A DNA stretch of 64,000 nucleotides from Perkinsus chesapeaki ATCC PRA-425 (GCA_013115145.1 JAAPAO010000090.1:1-64000), one strand, 5' to 3'; numbered from the stretch's first letter, positions 28,133 through 36,600 are shown. Made by a program: numbers and translations. The notes: generated by a model from the sequence alone, not told the origin.

Positions 28133-30115
28133 TTGCGGCGCAATAGTTCTGGAGGAGTGCACACGCCGCGGGGATTCAGTGAAAGGAATACTATGTCGCC
28201 CCCGAACCCGAGACGGGGAACACCGCAGCGCCAGGTCAAGCGGACCAGAACATCTGCGACGACGCCAACAAGCGCACGGCGGAGGGGCAGAAGCGTCTGC
28301 TCGCGAACCCCGGCCAATGTGGACAGCACATTACAGCAGTGGAGATTGTTTGAATATCTTACCTCGGCCACACCGACACAGTGGATGCGGGAGGTGTTCT
28401 GCGAATCTCCAGATGCCGAGGTTCAAAGGGTCATGGCCGAGGGCTTCCATGGCATCTTACCTGATGATGAACTAGTGGCTATGGCTGGGGACTCCCGACA
28501 GGAGATGCCCCTCCGAATAGTTGCTCTCATGGCCCTGCTATCTAGTGGTGATGCGACCCAGAACCAGGAGAGCTGTCGCCAAGTCGCCGCGCTGGTCATC
28601 GACGAGCTCAACTCTGCCATAACACTCGCTGAGATCGGCGTTGTTATCCTGATGGCAATCTGCCAAAGTATATCAGGGTCGATCGGGACGGACCGGGCCA
28701 CCAGCATCAGAACTTTGACGGTCCTCAGTTTGGCTTCGACCGTCAGAGTACGCATCCTATGGAGCGTGTTGAGCCTTGCACTGCCGCAAGGGTTAACCTC
28801 ACCGAACATCGAGGTGTCGGAGGAGGAGATTCTACGCGACCTCCGATTCAAGAAAGCCACTCTCGGGGAGAGGCTCACCGGCGGTCTGCTTGTTGTGTGT
28901 GGCAAGTGGCTCATGACGGGATCGGGCCCGACGCTGAAGATTGGTACGATTATCCCCTGGTTGGTCGGCAGCGGCAGTAGTGCTTCCCTGGCGAGGAGGT
29001 CCTCAGAAGCCGGCAGTGCTGTGGTGGAGCCCTCAGAAGCACCCGCCTTGTTGACAAGGAGTGACCGGTTCCCTAAGAGCGCTGCCATACACGTGTGTAG
29101 GTTAATGATGAGCGCTGGGGCCTGCACTGCTGCTGTTGACGACCCTTTCACACCAACTCATCCGCTGCAGGTGGAGATATACTACAGCTTCCTGCTACAG
29201 CACCACGGTGATCGAGACAGGGTATCAAAGCAGATGGAGCGTTGGGGAGGGGGCTCTCCGAAACTCGCTGAGGCAGTCCTGGAGATCTTGCTACGAGACT
29301 TTCCTCAGCAGTGCTGCAAATCCGGACTGTGGGAGAAGGTTGAGAATTCTGCCCTATATAGATTGGTCGCCTTGCTGCCTGGTCAAGAGAAGCTACCAGT
29401 GGAAGCCTTACGAAGGCTGACTCCACCCTCGACATGGCCAGACAGGGTCCGTCTTTCGCCTTGTACAGTAGACGCTGTATGGGAGCTTTCGATCGCCATC
29501 ACAAACGCTGCTTGCCACTCTACAGCCCTGGACGACGGCAGTAGCGGGCATGAGCTGGAGGTCGCTGTGGAATTTCTAGCGAACACTCTGCAATTGCTGA
29601 TTCGTAGTGCAGAGGATCCCCGTCCAGCCGTACTTCTAAGCAGCGGTGGACTCTGTGACGACAGGCATTTGATGCCCTTAACTACCAAGAGGACACCAGA
29701 ACCTCGACCGTACTGGATTGCCATGTCGGAAGACCGTCTACGCAAATGGTATTTGAAAACCATTCCCGAATCCGACTTTGGGCGCTACATCAAAGATTAT
29801 CAGACAGGAAGCATCCGGCCTCTCTCACCGAGCCTATTCACCAAGATGTCCGAGAAAGCCCGTCGCACAGCTGCTGCAGTTGCCGAGCTCTTTTACTCAA
29901 AACTACTCCAACTATGGGACGCTCCAGATGTCCACCGAGGGCTTCACCGAGCTAGACTGCTCCATTGGATATTCACTGAGTCCCAGCAGCCTCCCTTGGA
30001 TTCATTGAAGCTGGTAGAGAATGGTTATAAACAGGCACTACTGAGCTGGCTGGCGGACCTTTCTTTGAGACCCTCATCATTCGTGGTGAATCGAATTAAA
30101 AGCCTCTTTGATTGA
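28133..30115 (+). CDS. Intronless 660-aa hypothetical protein (basic N-terminus, Leu-rich helical-looking body)
   Basis: Uninterrupted 1983-nt ORF from ATG, followed by an AT-rich 3' region. Confidence 0.85.
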   Translation: MRRNSSGGVHTPRGFSERNTMSPPNPRRGTPQRQVKRTRTSATTPTSARRRGRSVCSRTPANVDSTLQQWRLFEYLTSATPTQWMREVFCESPDAEVQRVMAEGFHGILPDDELVAMAGDSRQEMPLRIVALMALLSSGDATQNQESCRQVAALVIDELNSAITLAEIGVVILMAICQSISGSIGTDRATSIRTLTVLSLASTVRVRILWSVLSLALPQGLTSPNIEVSEEEILRDLRFKKATLGERLTGGLLVVCGKWLMTGSGPTLKIGTIIPWLVGSGSSASLARRSSEAGSAVVEPSEAPALLTRSDRFPKSAAIHVCRLMMSAGACTAAVDDPFTPTHPLQVEIYYSFLLQHHGDRDRVSKQMERWGGGSPKLAEAVLEILLRDFPQQCCKSGLWEKVENSALYRLVALLPGQEKLPVEALRRLTPPSTWPDRVRLSPCTVDAVWELSIAITNAACHSTALDDGSSGHELEVAVEFLANTLQLLIRSAEDPRPAVLLSSGGLCDDRHLMPLTTKRTPEPRPYWIAMSEDRLRKWYLKTIPESDFGRYIKDYQTGSIRPLSPSLFTKMSEKARRTAAAVAELFYSKLLQLWDAPDVHRGLHRARLLHWIFTESQQPPLDSLKLVENGYKQALLSWLADLSLRPSSFVVNRIKSLFD

Positions 30116-30350
30116 CTATTAGTTTCAATAGTTATTCCTTTATTGTGTTCTACATAACAACACAACACTGAATAAATAATCGTTCCTAGAAAACATAGCT
30201 AATGATTAGGTGTTAATGATTGGGCGGCGCGAATCTTATCTCACAATTCTGCGCACCATGCGGCACAATTGGCCACTACAAATCGGGCGGGTACATCAGT
30301 AAACCACCAAAATGATATTCACCTCTTCGATACTTAATCACATTTTACAA

Positions 30351-31283
30351 TTACTGAGAGTAGGTGTGAACCTTGTCTGCAGCAGTCTGATAATACTTAT
30401 CAGCAGTAGCCTTAGCATCGGCAGCATACTTGCCAGCAGTTTCCTTAGCATCGGTGGCGTATTTGGTAGCAGTCTCCTTAGCATCTACCGCGTACTTGCT
30501 AGCAGTATCCTTGGCATCAGCGGCATACTTCGTCGCTGTTTCCTTGGCCTTAGCAGCTTTCTCCTTCACATCAGTAGAGTATTTATTAGCAGCATCCTTA
30601 GCTTGGGCGGAGTACTTGGCGGCAGTCTCCTTAGCTTGAGTGGTGTACTGGTGAACTGTGTCTTGACCCTTCTTCATAGAATCCTGAGCAGCTTCCTTGT
30701 TCTCAGAGAAGGCCTTCTGAAGACGGTCAATAAATGCAACCCACCACTCGCTGGCCTTATTGCGAAGTGCAAGAACATCCTCTTCAGCAATCTGTAAAGC
30801 AGGGAATGTGTCCTTTACATAACCAACCATAGACTTTAACGACTCCAAATAAGCGGAGAAGAAGCCCATTACTGAAGCATAAACCTTCTGCCAGTACATA
30901 GTAACGCAGCTACCACACTTGGTGATTTGGTAGTTGCCACGATAATAAAGGCGGGACGCCACGGTTGAACCCAGAGCTACTGCACGACTGAGAGGACTAA
31001 CGGAAGCCCCTTGACAACTTGATGGACTAGCAGCGGTGGTCTCAGAGCGATCCTCACCAGATTGAGGCTGAGGCTCTACAGGGGGGAGATAGTGGTTTAC
31101 TAACTCTTCGCCCCGACTGAGCAGAGAGTCTAGGAAGGAGTAGACACTTCCCAATGCCGCGTTGGTTGAGCGGGTAACTTTCTTCCCAGCATCAGTTTTC
31201 TTAAAATCATCAACCATCTTCTGAGTCTTCACTGTAGCATTATCAACAGTGCTACTGATAGAGTCGGCAACGTAGTTTGTCAT
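30351..31283 (-). CDS. Perilipin-like protein with C-terminal 11-mer amphipathic repeats (intronless, about 310 aa)
   Basis: Probable ATG at 31283 (MTNYVADS). FLDSLLSRGEELVNHYLPP followed by LSRAVALGSTVASRLY resembles the perilipin EELVDxYLP...RLGSLSTKLRSRAY segment. Seven AKETATKYAAD-type 11-mers. Confidence 0.7.
   Translation of the reverse strand: MTNYVADSISSTVDNATVKTQKMVDDFKKTDAGKKVTRSTNAALGSVYSFLDSLLSRGEELVNHYLPPVEPQPQSGEDRSETTAASPSSCQGASVSPLSRAVALGSTVASRLYYRGNYQITKCGSCVTMYWQKVYASVMGFFSAYLESLKSMVGYVKDTFPALQIAEEDVLALRNKASEWWVAFIDRLQKAFSENKEAAQDSMKKGQDTVHQYTTQAKETAAKYSAQAKDAANKYSTDVKEKAAKAKETATKYAADAKDTASKYAVDAKETATKYATDAKETAGKYAADAKATADKYYQTAADKVHTYSQ
30384..30635 (-). repeat. 33-nt (11-aa) coding tandem repeats
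   Basis: AKETAAKYSAQ, AKDAANKYSTD, a 7-aa spacer, then AKETATKYAAD, AKDTASKYAVD, AKETATKYATD, AKETAGKYAAD and AKATADKYYQT. Confidence 0.95.
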
Positions 31284-32093
31284 TGTTATAAGCAATACCC
31301 AATAACGGAAACAAAGGATAACACACCACAGGACAGCTCGAGAGGAACACAAGAAAATTGCACGCATGCACATACTTGCACAAAGCTCAGTGTCTCCTTA
31401 ACGCGCAACTGGACAGTTTTGCACGAAGTGTTTCCCATTCCCACAACTCAAAATCGACACATGGCGTATTGTCCAACAAACCTAAGATATTGTGCCGGGC
31501 TGAGTTATAAGCACCGTAAGTGTAAACGTTATTCAGCAGATATTCAACTGAGGCAGCCATAACAGGAATGAGACAATACTAATCTATCACTTGGGAGGAG
31601 AATAGATATAACGAGTCATGACTGGATCGGAAGCAGCATAAGCCAGACAACGCCTTGTTAGGTAAAAGGTGAACAGACATCCGAAGCACAGAGTGCTTCG
31701 TCAAGGCATAATATGGTCAAGGAAACGGCAGTAAATGAAACATAATCCGCCATTGAATGATACACGTCTTTACTTGCCTGAAGAATGTCGACTGATAATA
31801 GAACAGAACTTGGTCAACTCCACTCACGCAGCTAAAAACTATTGAATAAAATGGACTAATGATTGATTAACGATGCTTGATAACGCTGAAGACTGAAGAC
31901 ACGAGCCAAAAATCATAAATGTATATCAGACCATGCGCAGGACCCTAAGAGCGGCCATAGCCGCCTGAGCAGCCTGAACTGTTCGGGCCTGAGATGCACT
32001 TGAATGTCGGGGCAGATAGGTAAAAGATGCTCATCACATTGCTCCATTCGTAGTCAGGGTTCGTAGCCTTGAGATTTTCCTTAGCAGCATTGA

Positions 32094-33406
32094 CTATAGC
32101 AGTCGCAAGCAGCCAGTCGTTTGAGTCATTCTGATAGTTATAACTATTGTTCTGAGAGAGCAAGGAACGATAAGATATATTATCATAGTAAAGCAGGTTG
32201 AAGCATTGCTCACCGAAAACTGAAATGGAATTGTATAAAATCCGCCGGGGAGGTATGGCTGTGAGGTGTAGCAGGGCGCAGCAGCAGCAGGTTGCGAGTA
32301 AGGTAAATGGTATGAAACAGGGTACCAAACAGAATCGTTTCCAAGGGATCTGGAAAAAAAGAAAAAGACAAGTTTCCCAAACAGTTCTAGGATAGTGGTG
32401 GTGGCCTTCTTACGTATTAGCCAGGCCGGAATTGGTTCGCGCACGCCCGTTGTTCACCGCTGCAAACGACGAGCGTCTTCTGCTTTCTCCATCCCCTTCA
32501 ATATGTTGATCGATATTAGGCACGCTTGCCCTTCGACCAGCCTTGGCTGATTTTTTATTTGTTTTAAATTTTCCGAGCAGGTCCTCAACAGCCACCCTGG
32601 CAGCAGCGGAAGCACGCTCTATACGGGTACGACCCCTCGAAGAGGTGGTGGAGACTGGGGATGAACCTGGAGACAATTCCAGGCTCTTGCTGCTGCTGAT
32701 CAAGAGAGATTATGTGAATGTTACAAAAATGTTCCTCGCTTGTGATGTTCTGATTTGTCGGCGAAATAACATCTGAACCTCCGTGGACCTGACCGAGGCT
32801 TTCAACGATAGTTCTGGTAGTCTCGCTCGAGAACTCACCGTGGCGTCCGGATTGTGGACGTGCCTCAGCTCCTCGTGGGAGTGAGCAAAAGGGCAATCTT
32901 GAGATCCTTTTCTACACGCCCCGTTCATAAAAGCGATGCACAGCTTCGTCTTGCGGAGGTCTAGTCCCTCATGGACTTCATCAGCGGTATGAGCAAAGCA
33001 ACCTAACAGGATTGCCTTATTGCCATTTGAGTGGAGAGGGCCCAAGATGGACGCACATGCGTTTCCGAAGGTGCAGGCACCTCGAGGATAATACTTGCAT
33101 AGCTTTGTACGATACAGCTTAGCCGCCAGCCGAGTTCCTGCTCAGTATAGTACTAGAAAAGAAAACAACACTACCCTACCGGTCCGAGTTGTAGGAACGC
33201 TATCATGCGTCGCAGCCCTAAAAGTGAAGGTATGATGAGCACGACGGAAACTACGCGGACTACGCCCCATGTGCGCACCTCTTCCGCGGAACGTATTGAT
33301 GCCTCGGACTCTCATAGATGGCAGATTTGGATGCCACCATTGGTGTGGGAGGCGCGGTTGGGGAAGACACATTTGATGAGGAGAAGGAGGGGGAGGATGA
33401 TGACAT
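32094..33406 (-). CDS. Tandem CCCH zinc-finger (RNA-binding) protein
   Basis: KLYRTKLCKYYPRGACTFGNAC|xFAH and LRKTKLCIAFMNGACRKGSQDCPFAHSHEELR, with Ser/Pro-rich flanks. The 3' end is uncertain. Confidence 0.8.
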
Positions 33407-33613: not shown

Positions 33614-36600
33614 CTAAAACGATTGTGACTTGGACACTTTCAGGGAAGGAGCGTCACGTGGGGTACGGCGCCACTGCCTTCTCATCATAGGCATCGGCGG
33701 CGATCTACTTGATAGTAATAATAGTAGGCGGTCGTCTGTGGGGCACCTTCGAGTGGCGGAGGAGGATGAAGGGGAACCGATGATCTACCTGAGACCGAAA
33801 GACGTCATTGCTGTCAGCGATCGAGGGTCAAACCGTTCCGGGGCAGATACTCCTGAAACTGATGAGAGCGTCTGTTGTCACCAACGAGCGGCGCCGCCAG
33901 AACAGGCAGGTGTGCTCGGTCGTGAGAAGGTCGATGGAACCTACTCACATTGGCAGCAGCTTGCTCGACTTGTGGAGGGTCACCTAAATTCTCTACGGGA
34001 CCGTTCACGACTGCGTCGTTTGCCCATCGAGAACGGCCAGCAGCCGGCGCCACTCGCCGCACGGTCGGAGCCGGCCACAGGCCTCCCGCGCTGGCCCAGC
34101 GACAGCGCCCGTCTTATCGTGTTAGAAGTTGCAGCCATGAGGAAAAGCAATGTGACCTGTTATAGGGGCAGTAAGGCGGGTAAACGGTGGGCGCGCACCA
34201 ACCAGCGCTAGGGCCACCAGCGCCCCAAGCTCGGTCTCCCGAAATCCCCGAGCATCTTGTTCTGGTGGCAGAAGCAACGGGGAGTTGATGACCATACGGG
34301 ACGCGGAGTGATTGGGAACATGGGGGCGATCGGCCAGACTAGGGGGCAGCGTAATGGTGTAGGCATGGTAAAAGCTTACCCAATTCTAGAACGACCGGCA
34401 TCGAAAACGGTGTAGAACTTCTTCATGAAAGTATCGCCGAAGACCCAAGGCGACGTATCGTGGCCCATCTGCACCTGCACCGGCTCGCATCAGCTTCAAT
34501 CATCCACAGCGATCCAATTTAGTCTAGACGCTCACCTCGAGTACACACTGCTTGCTATCGAGACCAGGTCCCGTAAAGTAGTCATGTGGCAGCACCGGAA
34601 ACTGTCGGTTGGCAACGAGAACCTGATCTTGGCAGTAGTAGTAGGGGACCCCTTCCTGCTTCGGGGGCTGCTGCTGTCCTACACTGATTCTTCGGGCATG
34701 CTGCCGTAAATCACATGGACAAATCTGACCATGGTGATCTCTGTAGATGAGACGAGCAGCAGCACTTACAACAAGATTGCTCGGTTTCAGAACCGAACAC
34801 TTGGCGAGCTTATCAGAGGGCAGCAGAGCAGAGAGGAATTTCACAAAGTCCGGTCTTGGAACCATCAAATAAGAGGTTCCGGTGTCCAACACAATAGCCT
34901 GTAGCGGAGCTACCGATTGCACACCAATGCGCCGGCTCAAATTCGGAGGCTTACCTGCCTCTGGACAAGCAAGCGCTTTGGTACAGGTTCAATATCGTCA
35001 CCCCCTTCAACAAGCTCACTGTCAGCAGCAGCAGCCGCCGCCGCCACACCAACAGTGTTCCCTAAGGCGAATCGAGCCATCGACAATCTAACTGTGATTG
35101 CATTCTCTTCCAACCGTCGTCCTTGTGTGACTTTTTCTCTTCGATCACTTCTATAACTGTCTCCATGGCCCAATACACATGACTAACCAACGGAGCCCAC
35201 GTAAGGGTCTCTGCTCGGAACCTACACCACCACCAGCAATCACATCATCCCTCTGCGGTCGACACACTAACATGCTTGCATCCAAGCCACCGAAAGCAAC
35301 GGAGCTTCCCATCGTAGCAGCAGCAATAGGGTCCTCCGACAACGAGAATGCCATAACCTGCCCGATACCGCTCCCTTCCATCTGGCATGCAATTGGTGTA
35401 CTGGTTCCCCCAGGTGCTGTAGGATGTTCTCCAGTGCCGTCGTGCCCGTGCTGCCGAGCGCAGGGAAGCCGAGCCTGCGAACGGCTCTTCATAGGGAGAA
35501 TCAGGAAGCAGTTTTTTACCCCATGACACCATCATACAATCCACCCTCGAGGTCTTCACTAAGTGTCGAAACAACCCTGAGAGCTCCTCAGTGAGGCCAC
35601 AGAGCCAAATGCTGAGTACAAATGCTGATGAGGAATGCAAAGGGCCTCCGCCGAGGTCCGAGTGGGGGGCACTTCTATCATGTCGCTCTTTGGGTTATTG
35701 TCAACTGCTCCGAAACACACCCGGTCCGACCCTAAACCATGCTTCTGCTGCATTCTTTGCCGCCAAGTACCCTCACCCAGCATGCCCTCGATCGACCCAA
35801 CGCCATAGGTCAACTTCCGAGTATCTTTAGACGCCTCGAACGTGCTCGAATTCGACGGGTCGAACCTTGCACGATCCCTCGAGAGTCGTTTCCCTGCTGC
35901 TCACCTCGATCTCGGCACCCAAACGTCAGCGCTGCCAGTGTCAAATATAACAGTGACAGTCTGGGCGGGCACACCAATCTGTATAGGCCCGAAGTACTGG
36001 GTGTTAGCAACGTTGATCAGAGGCTCTAGAATGTACGACAGTCGACTCGGGTCTGCAACAATGACAACGACGACGTATTCGACAGGCCAAATGTCCGAGT
36101 TCACCAGCACCTTTCAAGGCCTGGGAGGTCGAGACCACGGCAGCCGTCTCAACTTCACCAGCCACTGAATTCGCCTGCAGAGCGGTGTTCCACGACAGGC
36201 TCCTTCACGCCCTCTTACATCGTTCGAAAACTCATCACTTTTGGGCCTCCTATAGACCACCTGAGCGAAGCTGCTGTGTTTTTCCCGCTACACACTGATG
36301 AGATATTCTACTTTAAACTCTGATAAAGCGATAGGTATCTGGCCGCGAATCTCCATCGGAGAATTGCTGTCGCAAGGTACACCGGCGTGTGACACTTGTC
36401 TTGACAAGCGCACTTTCACAGGACGCCGCTACAAGAACACCGTTAACAAGAACAAGGGAAAAGCAGGTACTTGTTCATCGCCGTCCGACCGTTGGTCAAC
36501 ACGGACATACGACGCGAACTTATTGTGCGAAGAGCCCCGCAGATCCTGTTCACCGGTTGCCATTGAGAGAACCACCAACCCGAGGTGACCAAGCCTAAGG

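What the first reader, a model, noticed from the sequence alone, without database searches (positions are those of the whole stretch)
30351..31283. Perilipin-like lipid-droplet protein with rearranged architecture and seven 11-mer repeats
Seen in sequence: FLDSLLSRGEELVNHYLPP, a flexible linker, LSRAVALGSTVASRLY, a hydrophobic/aromatic helical segment, then seven AKETATKYAAD-type repeats. Established: the EELVDxYLP...RLGSLSTKL segment is a perilipin hallmark, 11-mer amphipathic repeats target lipid droplets, perilipins are known from animals, Dictyostelium and fungi, and similar 11-mers define group 3 LEA proteins. Inference: I know of no characterised alveolate perilipin, and here the repeats lie C-terminal to the hallmark rather than N-terminal. 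This could be an unrecognised droplet coat or perilipin/LEA hybrid in a lipid-storing parasite.
Basis: partly seen in the sequence, partly recalled or inferred. Interest (0 to 1): 0.75.

Follow-up and report, generated by a model that had tools for sequence, protein, structure and literature searches.

The report
Perilipin-like repeat protein of Perkinsus
A transcribed, single-exon Perkinsus gene encodes a 310-residue helical protein whose first third is distantly related to the middle of animal and fungal perilipins and whose tail is a new 11-residue repeat array, so it is a credible but untested lipid-droplet coat protein in a lineage where none has been described.

Summary
It carries both quoted motifs (residues 50-68 and 98-113), a variable linker, an aromatic amphipathic middle and a C-terminal 11-residue repeat array.

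The perilipin reading is partly supported:
- Pfam Perilipin (PF03036) matches residues 3-118 only, at profile positions 117-231. The score is 22-23 bits, E about 5e-5, below the curated cut-off of 33.
- All seven family members examined match the same profile stretch.
- A family profile aligns to a metagenomic family that passes the Perilipin cut-off and has a PAT domain. hhalign gives 93.6% probability, E 2e-7, score 56.7, against 14.4±2.6 for column shuffles.
- There is no PAT domain and no detectable four-helix bundle, so it is not a canonical perilipin.
- The repeats match neither LEA_4 nor Apolipoprotein at family level.

The family appears confined to Perkinsus: positional orthologues in P. 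marinus and P. olseni, and repeat-less paralogues. RNA-library contigs carry a Perkinsus-type spliced leader 14-37 nt upstream of the ATG, on about 92%-identical copies, so the gene family is expressed and this start codon is probably real.

Lipid-droplet localisation is inferred, not shown. The scan holds two other untested first-reader notes on similar repeat proteins elsewhere in this genome.

The parts
30351..31283 (-). Complete single-exon CDS, 310 aa plus TAA stop (P0001)
   Evidence: ORF list and translation. Positional orthologues P0003 (P. marinus, single exon) and P0002 (P. olseni) share the same start.
31284..31320 (-). Short 5' UTR with the spliced-leader acceptor zone
   Evidence: Two contigs about 92% identical to the window, from RNA libraries, have loose 5' ends at 31297 and 31320. 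Their reverse complements read GCCATCTGGCTCAAG (PmaSL2) and CGTAGCCATTTTGGCTCAAG (DinoSL) (PMC3101222). An exact-match contig reaches 31300.
30930..31277 (-). Perilipin-like N-terminal module, residues 3-118 (Pfam PF03036 profile positions 117-231)
   Evidence: 22.8-23.1 bits, E about 5e-5, unchanged when the repeats are removed. hhalign to family A3 gives 93.6% probability, E 2e-7. 70% of columns in residues 1-67 are invariant among the four sequences.
31080..31136 (-). Motif 1, residues 50-68 (FLDSLLSRGEELVNHYLPP)
   Evidence: E59, L61, V62, L66 and P67 are invariant across 12 sequences: the Perkinsus repeat type, the Perkinsus non-repeat type and the PAT-bearing metagenomic family.
30996..31079 (-). 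Variable, probably disordered linker, residues 69-96
   Evidence: 7% invariant columns, length-variable among homologues, pLDDT 29-36.
30945..30992 (-). Motif 2, residues 98-113 (LSRAVALGSTVASRLY)
   Evidence: L104, R111 and R115 are invariant and R100 nearly so across the 12 sequences. This lies within the Pfam-matched stretch, profile positions up to 228-233.
30669..30929 (-). Aromatic, strongly amphipathic helical middle, residues 119-205
   Evidence: 22-residue windows give mean hydrophobicity 0.34-0.69 and moment up to 0.50; 15 aromatic residues. Predicted helical. No Pfam hit for residues 120-210. No transmembrane-grade segment: maximum 19-residue Kyte-Doolittle mean is 0.96.
30354..30650 (-). 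C-terminal 11-residue repeat array, residues 212-310, consensus D-A-K-E/D-T-A-x-K-Y-A-A
   Evidence: A2, A6 and Y9 are invariant and K3 and K8 nearly so. The repeats are weakly hydrophobic (mean about -0.1 to 0.08, moment about 0.25). Only sub-threshold Apolipoprotein and YtxH hits.

Best explanation
This is a Perkinsus-specific, cytosolic, all-helical surface-binding protein built on a perilipin-derived core, and it most likely coats neutral-lipid droplets. Shown: the gene is intact and syntenic in three Perkinsus species. Transcripts of it or of a 92%-identical copy are trans-spliced just upstream of the ATG. Residues 3-118 are related to the perilipin segment that joins the 11-mer region to the C-terminal domain. 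The tail is a true 11/3-periodic amphipathic array. Inferred: in solution the protein is largely unfolded or loosely helical. On a phospholipid monolayer with packing defects, the strongly amphipathic helices rich in bulky residues (residues 34-66 and 122-198) insert and provide affinity. The long, weakly hydrophobic Ala/Thr/Tyr-faced repeat helix lies flat on the surface, as the perilipin-4 repeat helix does. It would add avidity and lateral polar contacts and shield stored triacylglycerol from lipases. Without a PAT domain or a four-helix bundle, it would not be expected to carry out the functions attributed to those domains.
For: Homology of the core:
- Pfam Perilipin matches all four orthologues (best E 3.4e-5) and the three repeat-less paralogues, always at profile positions 117/118 to 201-233.
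- The motif stretch alone keeps 15-20 bits.
- hhalign of the Perkinsus family against metagenomic family A3 gives 93.6% probability, E 2e-7, score 56.7. Column-shuffled controls give 14.4±2.6 (maximum 23.6) and reversed controls 14-17.
- A3 members pass the Perilipin cut-off: P0024 scores 39.2 bits including the PAT region at profile 8-104, and P0014 scores 33.6 bits.
- An HMM of the family run against 1.84 billion representatives recovers P0014 at E 2.3e-4 through the motif region.
- Language-model neighbours are perilipins (0.84; 0.89 without the repeats), followed by fungal Perilipin_2/Cap20 and plant REF/SRPP, all droplet proteins.

Physical properties: amphipathicity and periodicity; no signal peptide or transmembrane segment; all-alpha prediction with a disordered linker.

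Expression and start codon: together with PMC3101222.

Conservation: synteny with P. marinus and P. olseni; the N-terminal module is 70% invariant.
Against: - The Pfam score (about 22-23 bits) is below the curated cut-off of 33.
- The detectable similarity spans only about 75-115 residues, and most of the score comes from one two-part motif.
- No hit to the solved PLIN3/TIP47 C-terminal domain by sequence at E<=10, using the single protein or three different profiles.
- No PAT domain and no four-helix bundle signal.
- Both AlphaFold models are low-confidence (pLDDT 56 and 48) and Foldseek finds nothing.
- Atlas scores stay below 0.9, which the tool rates as leads only.
- The repeats are very polar (mean hydrophobicity about 0 or below), more like hydrophilins than typical droplet-targeting helices.
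- There are no localisation, proteomic or lipid-condition expression data. No paper mentions the P. marinus accessions that I could search for.
Confidence: 0.55

Rival explanations
1. It is a LEA-like or hydrophilin stress protectant. The polar 11-mer array would stabilise membranes and proteins during osmotic, thermal or dormancy stress in Perkinsus resting stages, and the perilipin-like core would serve only as a general membrane-binding handle.
For: The repeats are strongly hydrophilic with an Ala/Thr/Lys/Glu/Asp composition and clean 11-residue periodicity. The model predicts a long uninterrupted helix at low confidence, consistent with disorder in solution. Similar DAKETA-type repeats occur in unrelated bacterial proteins (P0006). 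Other 11-mer repeat proteins were noted elsewhere in this genome (untested).
Against: LEA_4 gives no hit at E<=10. The most conserved part is the perilipin-like N-terminal module, not the repeats. Paralogues P0007 and P0028 keep that module but have no repeats. The aromatic amphipathic middle is not LEA-like.
Confidence: 0.2
2. It is an exchangeable apolipoprotein-like lipid carrier, secreted or vacuolar, that solubilises host-derived lipid.
For: The best Pfam hit by E-value is Apolipoprotein A1/A4/E (E 1e-5 for the whole protein, 4e-6 for the tail). The helices are of the class-A type, with Lys at the polar/apolar interface.
Against: The score is 25-27 bits against a cut-off of 90. No signal peptide: mean Kyte-Doolittle hydrophobicity of residues 1-25 is -0.26. 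No proline-punctuated 22-mers: there are no prolines in residues 206-310. The hit comes from the repeat region alone and reflects periodicity and composition.
Confidence: 0.08
3. The perilipin resemblance is convergent or due to chance, and this is an unrelated helical structural protein of Perkinsus with no lipid role.
For: The match is below the cut-off, short and motif-centred. There is no structural corroboration.
Against: Seven of seven family members match the same profile coordinates. The hhalign score lies about 16 standard deviations above column shuffles. An independent embedding search ranks perilipins first, more strongly once the repeats are removed.
Confidence: 0.17

Closest known systems
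Perilipins PLIN1-5 and their Drosophila, C. elegans and Dictyostelium homologues (Pfam PF03036)
   Same: The module joining the end of the 11-mer region to the ELVDxYLP ... R-x3-L-x2-T-x3-R motif is shared, in the same order and with a variable acidic or Pro-rich linker inside it. Both are cytosolic, helical, amphipathic proteins without a transmembrane segment. Both rely on 11-residue amphipathic periodicity.
   Different: No PAT domain: the protein starts at profile position 117 and the mRNA 5' end lies a few tens of nucleotides upstream. No detectable four-helix bundle or rest of the alpha/beta subdomain. A crisp, recently homogenised 11-mer array sits at the C-terminus instead. The Pfam score is below the cut-off. 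The protein is much shorter (310 aa).
Perilipin 4 (giant 33-mer amphipathic helix; PMC8064757)
   Same: A long, repetitive, weakly hydrophobic helix with small residues (Ala/Thr) on the apolar face and many polar residues. Its period is a multiple of 11.
   Different: About 8 units rather than dozens. There is an invariant Tyr in each unit. The array lies C-terminal to the motif. No sequence homology of the repeats was shown.
Fungal Perilipin_2 proteins (Cap20, MPL1, Pln1/Pet10p; PF17316) and plant REF/SRPP droplet proteins (PF05755)
   Same: They appear among the nearest embedding neighbours. They are small droplet-coat proteins lacking the full mammalian architecture.
   Different: Only one faint Pfam hit to Perilipin_2 (E 0.13, one orthologue) and none to REF.
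Group 3 LEA proteins (LEA_4) and exchangeable apolipoproteins (PF01442)
   Same: 11-residue or 22-residue amphipathic periodicity and an Ala/Lys/Glu/Thr-rich composition.
   Different: No LEA_4 hit. The Apolipoprotein score is 25-27 bits against a cut-off of 90. No proline punctuation and no signal peptide.
Perkinsus paralogues P0007 and P0028, and the 'Oxyrrhis marina' UniRef entry P0027
   Same: The same N-terminal module (33-38% identity, BLASTP E 1e-15 to 1e-22) and the same Pfam Perilipin coordinates.
   Different: A C-terminal half rich in Trp, Phe, Tyr and Cys replaces the 11-mer array, and there is a 14-residue N-terminal extension.

Membership tests
Perilipin (PF03036) | Whole-protein score at or above Pfam's gathering cut-off (33 bits) | tested here: not met
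   21.7 bits for the full length and 23.1 bits for residues 1-130. Orthologues give a best E of 3.4e-5.
Perilipin (PF03036) | N-terminal PAT domain (profile positions about 1-110) | tested here: not met
   The match starts at profile 117 with residue 3. The orthologues share the same Met. The spliced-leader junction lies 14-37 nt upstream of the ATG on near-identical transcripts. No second perilipin-like stretch was found in the window with these queries.
Perilipin (PF03036) | Central 11-mer amphipathic repeat region preceding the motif | tested here: inconclusive
   Residues 3-57 align to profile 117 to about 165 as part of the whole hit, but give no hit on their own. Their lag-11 identity is only 0.12. 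Residues 34-66 are strongly amphipathic, with a moment of 0.46-0.49.
Perilipin (PF03036) | Conserved ELVDxYLP ... RLxSLSTKL-type segment at the start of the C-terminal domain | tested here: met
   The stretch alone scores 15-20 bits at profile 161-233. hhalign to the cut-off-passing family A3 gives 93.6%, E 2e-7, with shuffle and reversal controls. Invariant residues are listed.
Perilipin (PF03036) | C-terminal four-helix bundle with alpha/beta subdomain (PLIN3/TIP47 fold) | tested here: not met
   Profile positions beyond about 233 add no score: the full-length score is no higher than that of the N-terminal part. No sequence hit to PDB perilipin chains. The models are low-confidence and Foldseek finds nothing, so a divergent bundle cannot be strictly excluded.
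Perilipin (PF03036) | Localisation to the lipid-droplet monolayer | not testable with these tools
   This needs tagging or proteomics. No literature was found on the P. marinus accessions searched.
Group 3 LEA (Pfam LEA_4) | Match to the LEA_4 repeat model | tested here: not met
   LEA_4 is absent from the Pfam results at E<=10 for the whole protein and at E<=1 for residues 200-310. HMMER's filters may drop very weak matches.
Group 3 LEA (Pfam LEA_4) | Tandem hydrophilic 11-mers forming an amphipathic helix | tested here: met
   This is a resemblance in kind, not evidence of membership.
Apolipoprotein A1/A4/E (PF01442) | Score at or above the cut-off (90 bits); proline-punctuated 22-mers; secretion signal | tested here: not met
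   25.6-27.2 bits. No Pro in residues 206-310. The N-terminus is not hydrophobic.

The most novel reading that the evidence does not exclude
Perkinsozoa carry a small family of true perilipin descendants. P. marinus has at least four genes in two architectural classes, and one class replaces the four-helix bundle with a homogenised 11-mer helix. This would show that the perilipin core is not confined to opisthokonts and Amoebozoa. Either it dates back to an early eukaryote or it was transferred. It would also give alveolate parasites their first identified droplet-coat protein.
Probability: 0.4. Interest if true: 0.72.

Novelty: new variant of a known kind. Interest (0 to 1): 0.55.

Why it matters
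Recent literature describes perilipins as restricted to animals, fungi and amoebae and their close relatives. It takes that restriction as a reason to doubt a single origin of droplet coats (bioRxiv 10.1101/2025.10.20.683490; PMC4562238; PMC8100218). A perilipin-derived protein in Perkinsus would widen that range to alveolates. It would also provide a natural 'minimal' design, consisting of the motif module, an aromatic amphipathic helix and a perilipin-4-like repeat, for asking which parts suffice for droplet binding. Finally, it would supply a marker for neutral-lipid stores in an economically important oyster and clam parasite. If the droplet role fails, it remains an ordinary lineage-specific repeat protein.

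Tried and rejected
1. Sequence searches of PDB chains with the protein and with three profiles (A1, A3, A7) gave no perilipin/TIP47 hit at E<=10. They returned only designed helical proteins and noise.
2. AlphaFold2 on a 12-row alignment gave pLDDT 56 and pTM 0.24 for this protein, and pLDDT 48 for paralogue P0028. Both models are all-helical but unusable. Foldseek against PDB found nothing below E 3.
3. The Atlas structure neighbours all have TM below 0.45 and are unrelated bacterial proteins, so I disregarded them.
4. The word-index searches and the exhaustive representative search found no further alveolate homologues beyond Perkinsus and one 'Oxyrrhis' entry. Most other hits match only the low-complexity repeats (for example the Macro-domain protein P0010, the DUF4342 protein P0006 and GPCR fragments) and were rejected as compositional.
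5. Neighbouring genes give no functional clue. They are aspartyl proteases upstream, a CCCH zinc-finger ORF and a 660-aa ORF without Pfam domains.
6. The antisense ORF 30312-30797(+) is a by-product of the repeat.
7. I did not type perilipin sequences from memory, so there is no direct alignment to human PLIN2/3.

Full report
**What is there**

On the minus strand, ATG 31283 to TAA 30353-30351 is a 310-codon ORF. The longer 340-codon ORF only adds 30 codons upstream. These are absent from all orthologues, which start at the same Met.

The protein (P0001) has five parts:
- A conserved N-terminal segment, residues 1-67, ending in FLDSLLSRGEELVNHYLPP (50-68). 70% of its columns are invariant among four Perkinsus sequences.
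- A variable Pro/Ser/Glu/Gln linker, 69-96, with 7% invariant columns.
- LSRAVALGSTVASRLY (98-113).
- An aromatic amphipathic middle, 119-205.
- An 11-residue repeat array, about 212-310.

**The repeats**

Lag-11 identity is 0.51 in the tail, against 0.11-0.12 elsewhere. The hydrophobic moment peaks at 98 degrees, as expected for an 11/3 helix. It reaches 0.32, against 0.18±0.02 for shuffles. Tandem Repeats Finder reports a 33-bp period.

The unit is D-A-K-E/D-T-A-x-K-Y-A-A. A2, A6 and Y9 are invariant and K3 and K8 nearly so. On an 11/3 wheel the apolar face is T5-Y9-A2-A6-A10, flanked by Lys and Asp.

There are six canonical units, an 18-residue hybrid and a degenerate end. Orthologues differ by in-register 11- or 22-residue indels.

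The repeats are very polar, with mean hydrophobicity about -0.1 to 0.08 and a moment of about 0.25. By contrast, residues 34-66, 122-155 and 166-198 are strongly amphipathic and carry bulky residues, with mean hydrophobicity 0.34-0.69 and moments of 0.37-0.50.

There is no transmembrane-grade segment and no signal-peptide-like N-terminus.

**Organism, orthologues and expression**

The only close relatives are Perkinsus proteins annotated as hypothetical: P. olseni P0002 (64% identity) and P. marinus P0003 and P0022/P0004 (61-64%).

The window is collinear with the P. olseni and P. marinus loci. Aspartyl-protease genes lie upstream at about 34.3-36.4 kb, then this gene. A convergent gene downstream is shared with P. 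olseni. P0001, P0002 and P0003 are therefore positional orthologues, and the P. marinus gene is a single exon.

P. marinus also has repeat-less paralogues, P0007 and P0028. They share the N-terminal module (about 29-38% identity, BLASTP E 1e-15 to 1e-22) but end in an aromatic, Cys-rich half. A UniRef entry labelled Oxyrrhis marina (P0027) belongs to that subgroup.

Contigs from small RNA or putative-RNA libraries match the CDS exactly. Two contigs about 92% identical (another allele, copy or strain) carry 5' loose ends at 31297 and 31320. The reverse complement of one reads GCCATCTGGCTCAAG, the 3' part of the 21-nt Perkinsus spliced leader PmaSL2 (PMC3101222). The other reads CGTAGCCATTTTGGCTCAAG, the dinoflagellate leader, which may derive from the library primer.

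So mRNAs of this gene family are trans-spliced 14-37 nt upstream of the ATG. That supports the start codon and leaves no room for an upstream PAT-coding exon. The junction was seen on the divergent copies. The exact-match contig reaches 31300.

**Is it perilipin-like?**

Pfam gives a sub-threshold Perilipin hit for the whole protein: 21.7 bits, E 1.2e-4, cut-off 33. Dissecting the protein shows three things:
- The hit comes wholly from residues 3-118, matching profile 117-231 at 23 bits, E about 5e-5.
- It is unchanged without the repeats.
- The tail matches only Apolipoprotein and YtxH, far below their cut-offs, and residues 120-210 match nothing.

The motif stretch alone keeps 15-20 bits at profile 161-233. 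All four orthologues and all three repeat-less paralogues hit the same profile coordinates.

An HMM of the family, run against 1.84 billion representative proteins, found only three kinds of match:
- Perkinsus proteins.
- Repeat-only compositional matches.
- P0014, through the motif region, at E 2.3e-4.

P0014 and its four metagenomic relatives (alignment A3) carry a PAT-like N-terminus. Two of them, P0024 at 39.2 bits including profile 8-104 and P0014 at 33.6 bits, pass Pfam's Perilipin cut-off.

Profile-profile comparison of the Perkinsus family with A3 gives 93.6% probability, E 2e-7, score 56.7 over 101 columns. My controls gave 14.4±2.6 (maximum 23.6) for 100 column shuffles and 14-17 for reversed alignments. 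The result is unchanged without the repeats.

Across the 12 aligned sequences, Q21, E59, L61, V62, L66, P67, L104, R111 and R115 are invariant.

The language-model search independently puts perilipin clusters first, at 0.84 for the whole protein and 0.89 without the repeats. Fungal Perilipin_2/Cap20 and plant REF/SRPP droplet proteins follow. These scores are below the tool's 0.9 line, so they count as leads only.

**What is missing**

- There is no PAT domain.
- The N-terminal 57 residues show no 11-residue periodicity of their own.
- Nothing matches the four-helix bundle.
- PDB sequence searches never reach PLIN3/TIP47.
- Both AlphaFold models are low-confidence, all-helical and have a disordered linker, and Foldseek finds nothing.

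By the defining features listed in recent reviews (PAT domain, 11-mer region, four-helix bundle; PMC13753571, PMC4562238), this is not a canonical perilipin. It is a protein that retains one perilipin module.

The motif is real and is probably homologous to the perilipin segment.

'Rearranged' is not the best description. The perilipin order (tail of the 11-mer region, then the motif) is kept. The PAT domain is absent, and the new repeat array occupies the place of the four-helix bundle.

'LEA hybrid' is not supported at family level, because LEA_4 gives no hit.

The claim that no alveolate perilipin has been characterised fits my literature searches. It also fits a 2025 preprint stating that perilipins appear restricted to the lineages where they were first found and their close relatives.

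**Mechanism (inferred)**

I read this as a soluble, largely unstructured protein that folds into amphipathic helices on a lipid monolayer.

The helices rich in bulky residues (34-66 and 122-198) would insert into packing defects. The long, weakly hydrophobic repeat helix would add avidity and lateral polar contacts, as proposed for perilipin 4 (PMC8064757, abstract). Together they would form a coat on triacylglycerol droplets.

I put homology of the core at about 0.8 and the droplet-coat function at about 0.55. The rivals are a LEA-like stress protectant (0.2), chance or convergent resemblance in a structural helical protein (0.17) and an apolipoprotein-like carrier (0.08).

**Novelty and interest**

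The proteins are already in databases as hypothetical proteins. Their perilipin relationship and two-class architecture in Perkinsus appear to be undescribed.

I rate this a new variant of a known kind, of moderate interest (0.55). It bears on whether droplet coats share an ancient origin and it is easy to test. However, the homology rests on a short module and the function is untested.

Two other first-reader notes in this genome (s1-238486, s1-235068) describe further perilipin-like or 11-mer repeat genes. I could not examine them.

Noticed in passing
window 31284-31320 (-): RNA-library contigs about 92% identical to the gene carry a Perkinsus PmaSL2-type spliced leader (and, in a 454 RT-PCR metatranscriptome, the DinoSL, possibly from the primer). 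The leader is joined 14-37 nt upstream of the ATG. In the window the bases just before these junctions read GG rather than AG.
   Followed up: partly
L006:4001-4968 (P. olseni orthologue): The annotated P. olseni protein lacks 28 residues only because the assembly has a frameshift near QKAF/NKEAAQ. The annotation bridges it with an 86-nt 'intron'. Straight translation shows the missing segment split across two frames.
   Followed up: yes
window ~34272-36423 (-): Multi-exon aspartyl-protease (PF00026) gene or genes, conserved in position upstream of the perilipin-like gene in P. marinus and P. olseni.
   Followed up: partly
window 28133-30115 (+): A 660-aa ORF without Pfam domains, convergent with the gene. 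It is homologous to the 965-aa gene in the same position in P. olseni, so it probably extends further upstream to about 27.7 kb and is spliced.
   Followed up: partly
window 32713-33045 (-): An ORF with a sub-threshold CCCH zinc-finger match lies between the protease genes and the perilipin-like gene. No counterpart was seen in the shorter intergenic region of the P. marinus or P. olseni loci.
   Followed up: no
window 30312-30797 (+): A 161-aa antisense ORF rich in Leu, Ser and Ile runs through the repeat array. It has no Pfam hit and is most likely a by-product of the repeat's codon pattern.
   Followed up: partly
P0027 (UniRef A0A7S3ULT7, labelled Oxyrrhis marina): It is 61-63% identical to the P. 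marinus paralogues P0007 and P0028. That is as close as Perkinsus species are to each other for this family. It is either a true Oxyrrhis homologue or cross-contamination of the transcriptome.
   Followed up: no
L001:35-1231 (metagenomic contig carrying P0014): The PAT-bearing perilipin-like gene sits in a very gene-dense, apparently intron-less contig. Its neighbours are a probable Macro-domain protein with EKPASED-type repeats (judged by eye, no domain scan run) and a possible small Tim-like protein (also by eye). The source organism is unknown.
   Followed up: no
window 30888-31320, read laying records 15 and 22: A second sequence variant (24-27 differences in about 300 nt) diverges completely below 31010, in the linker. 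It could be a second allele, the other genomic copy or a sister strain.
   Followed up: no
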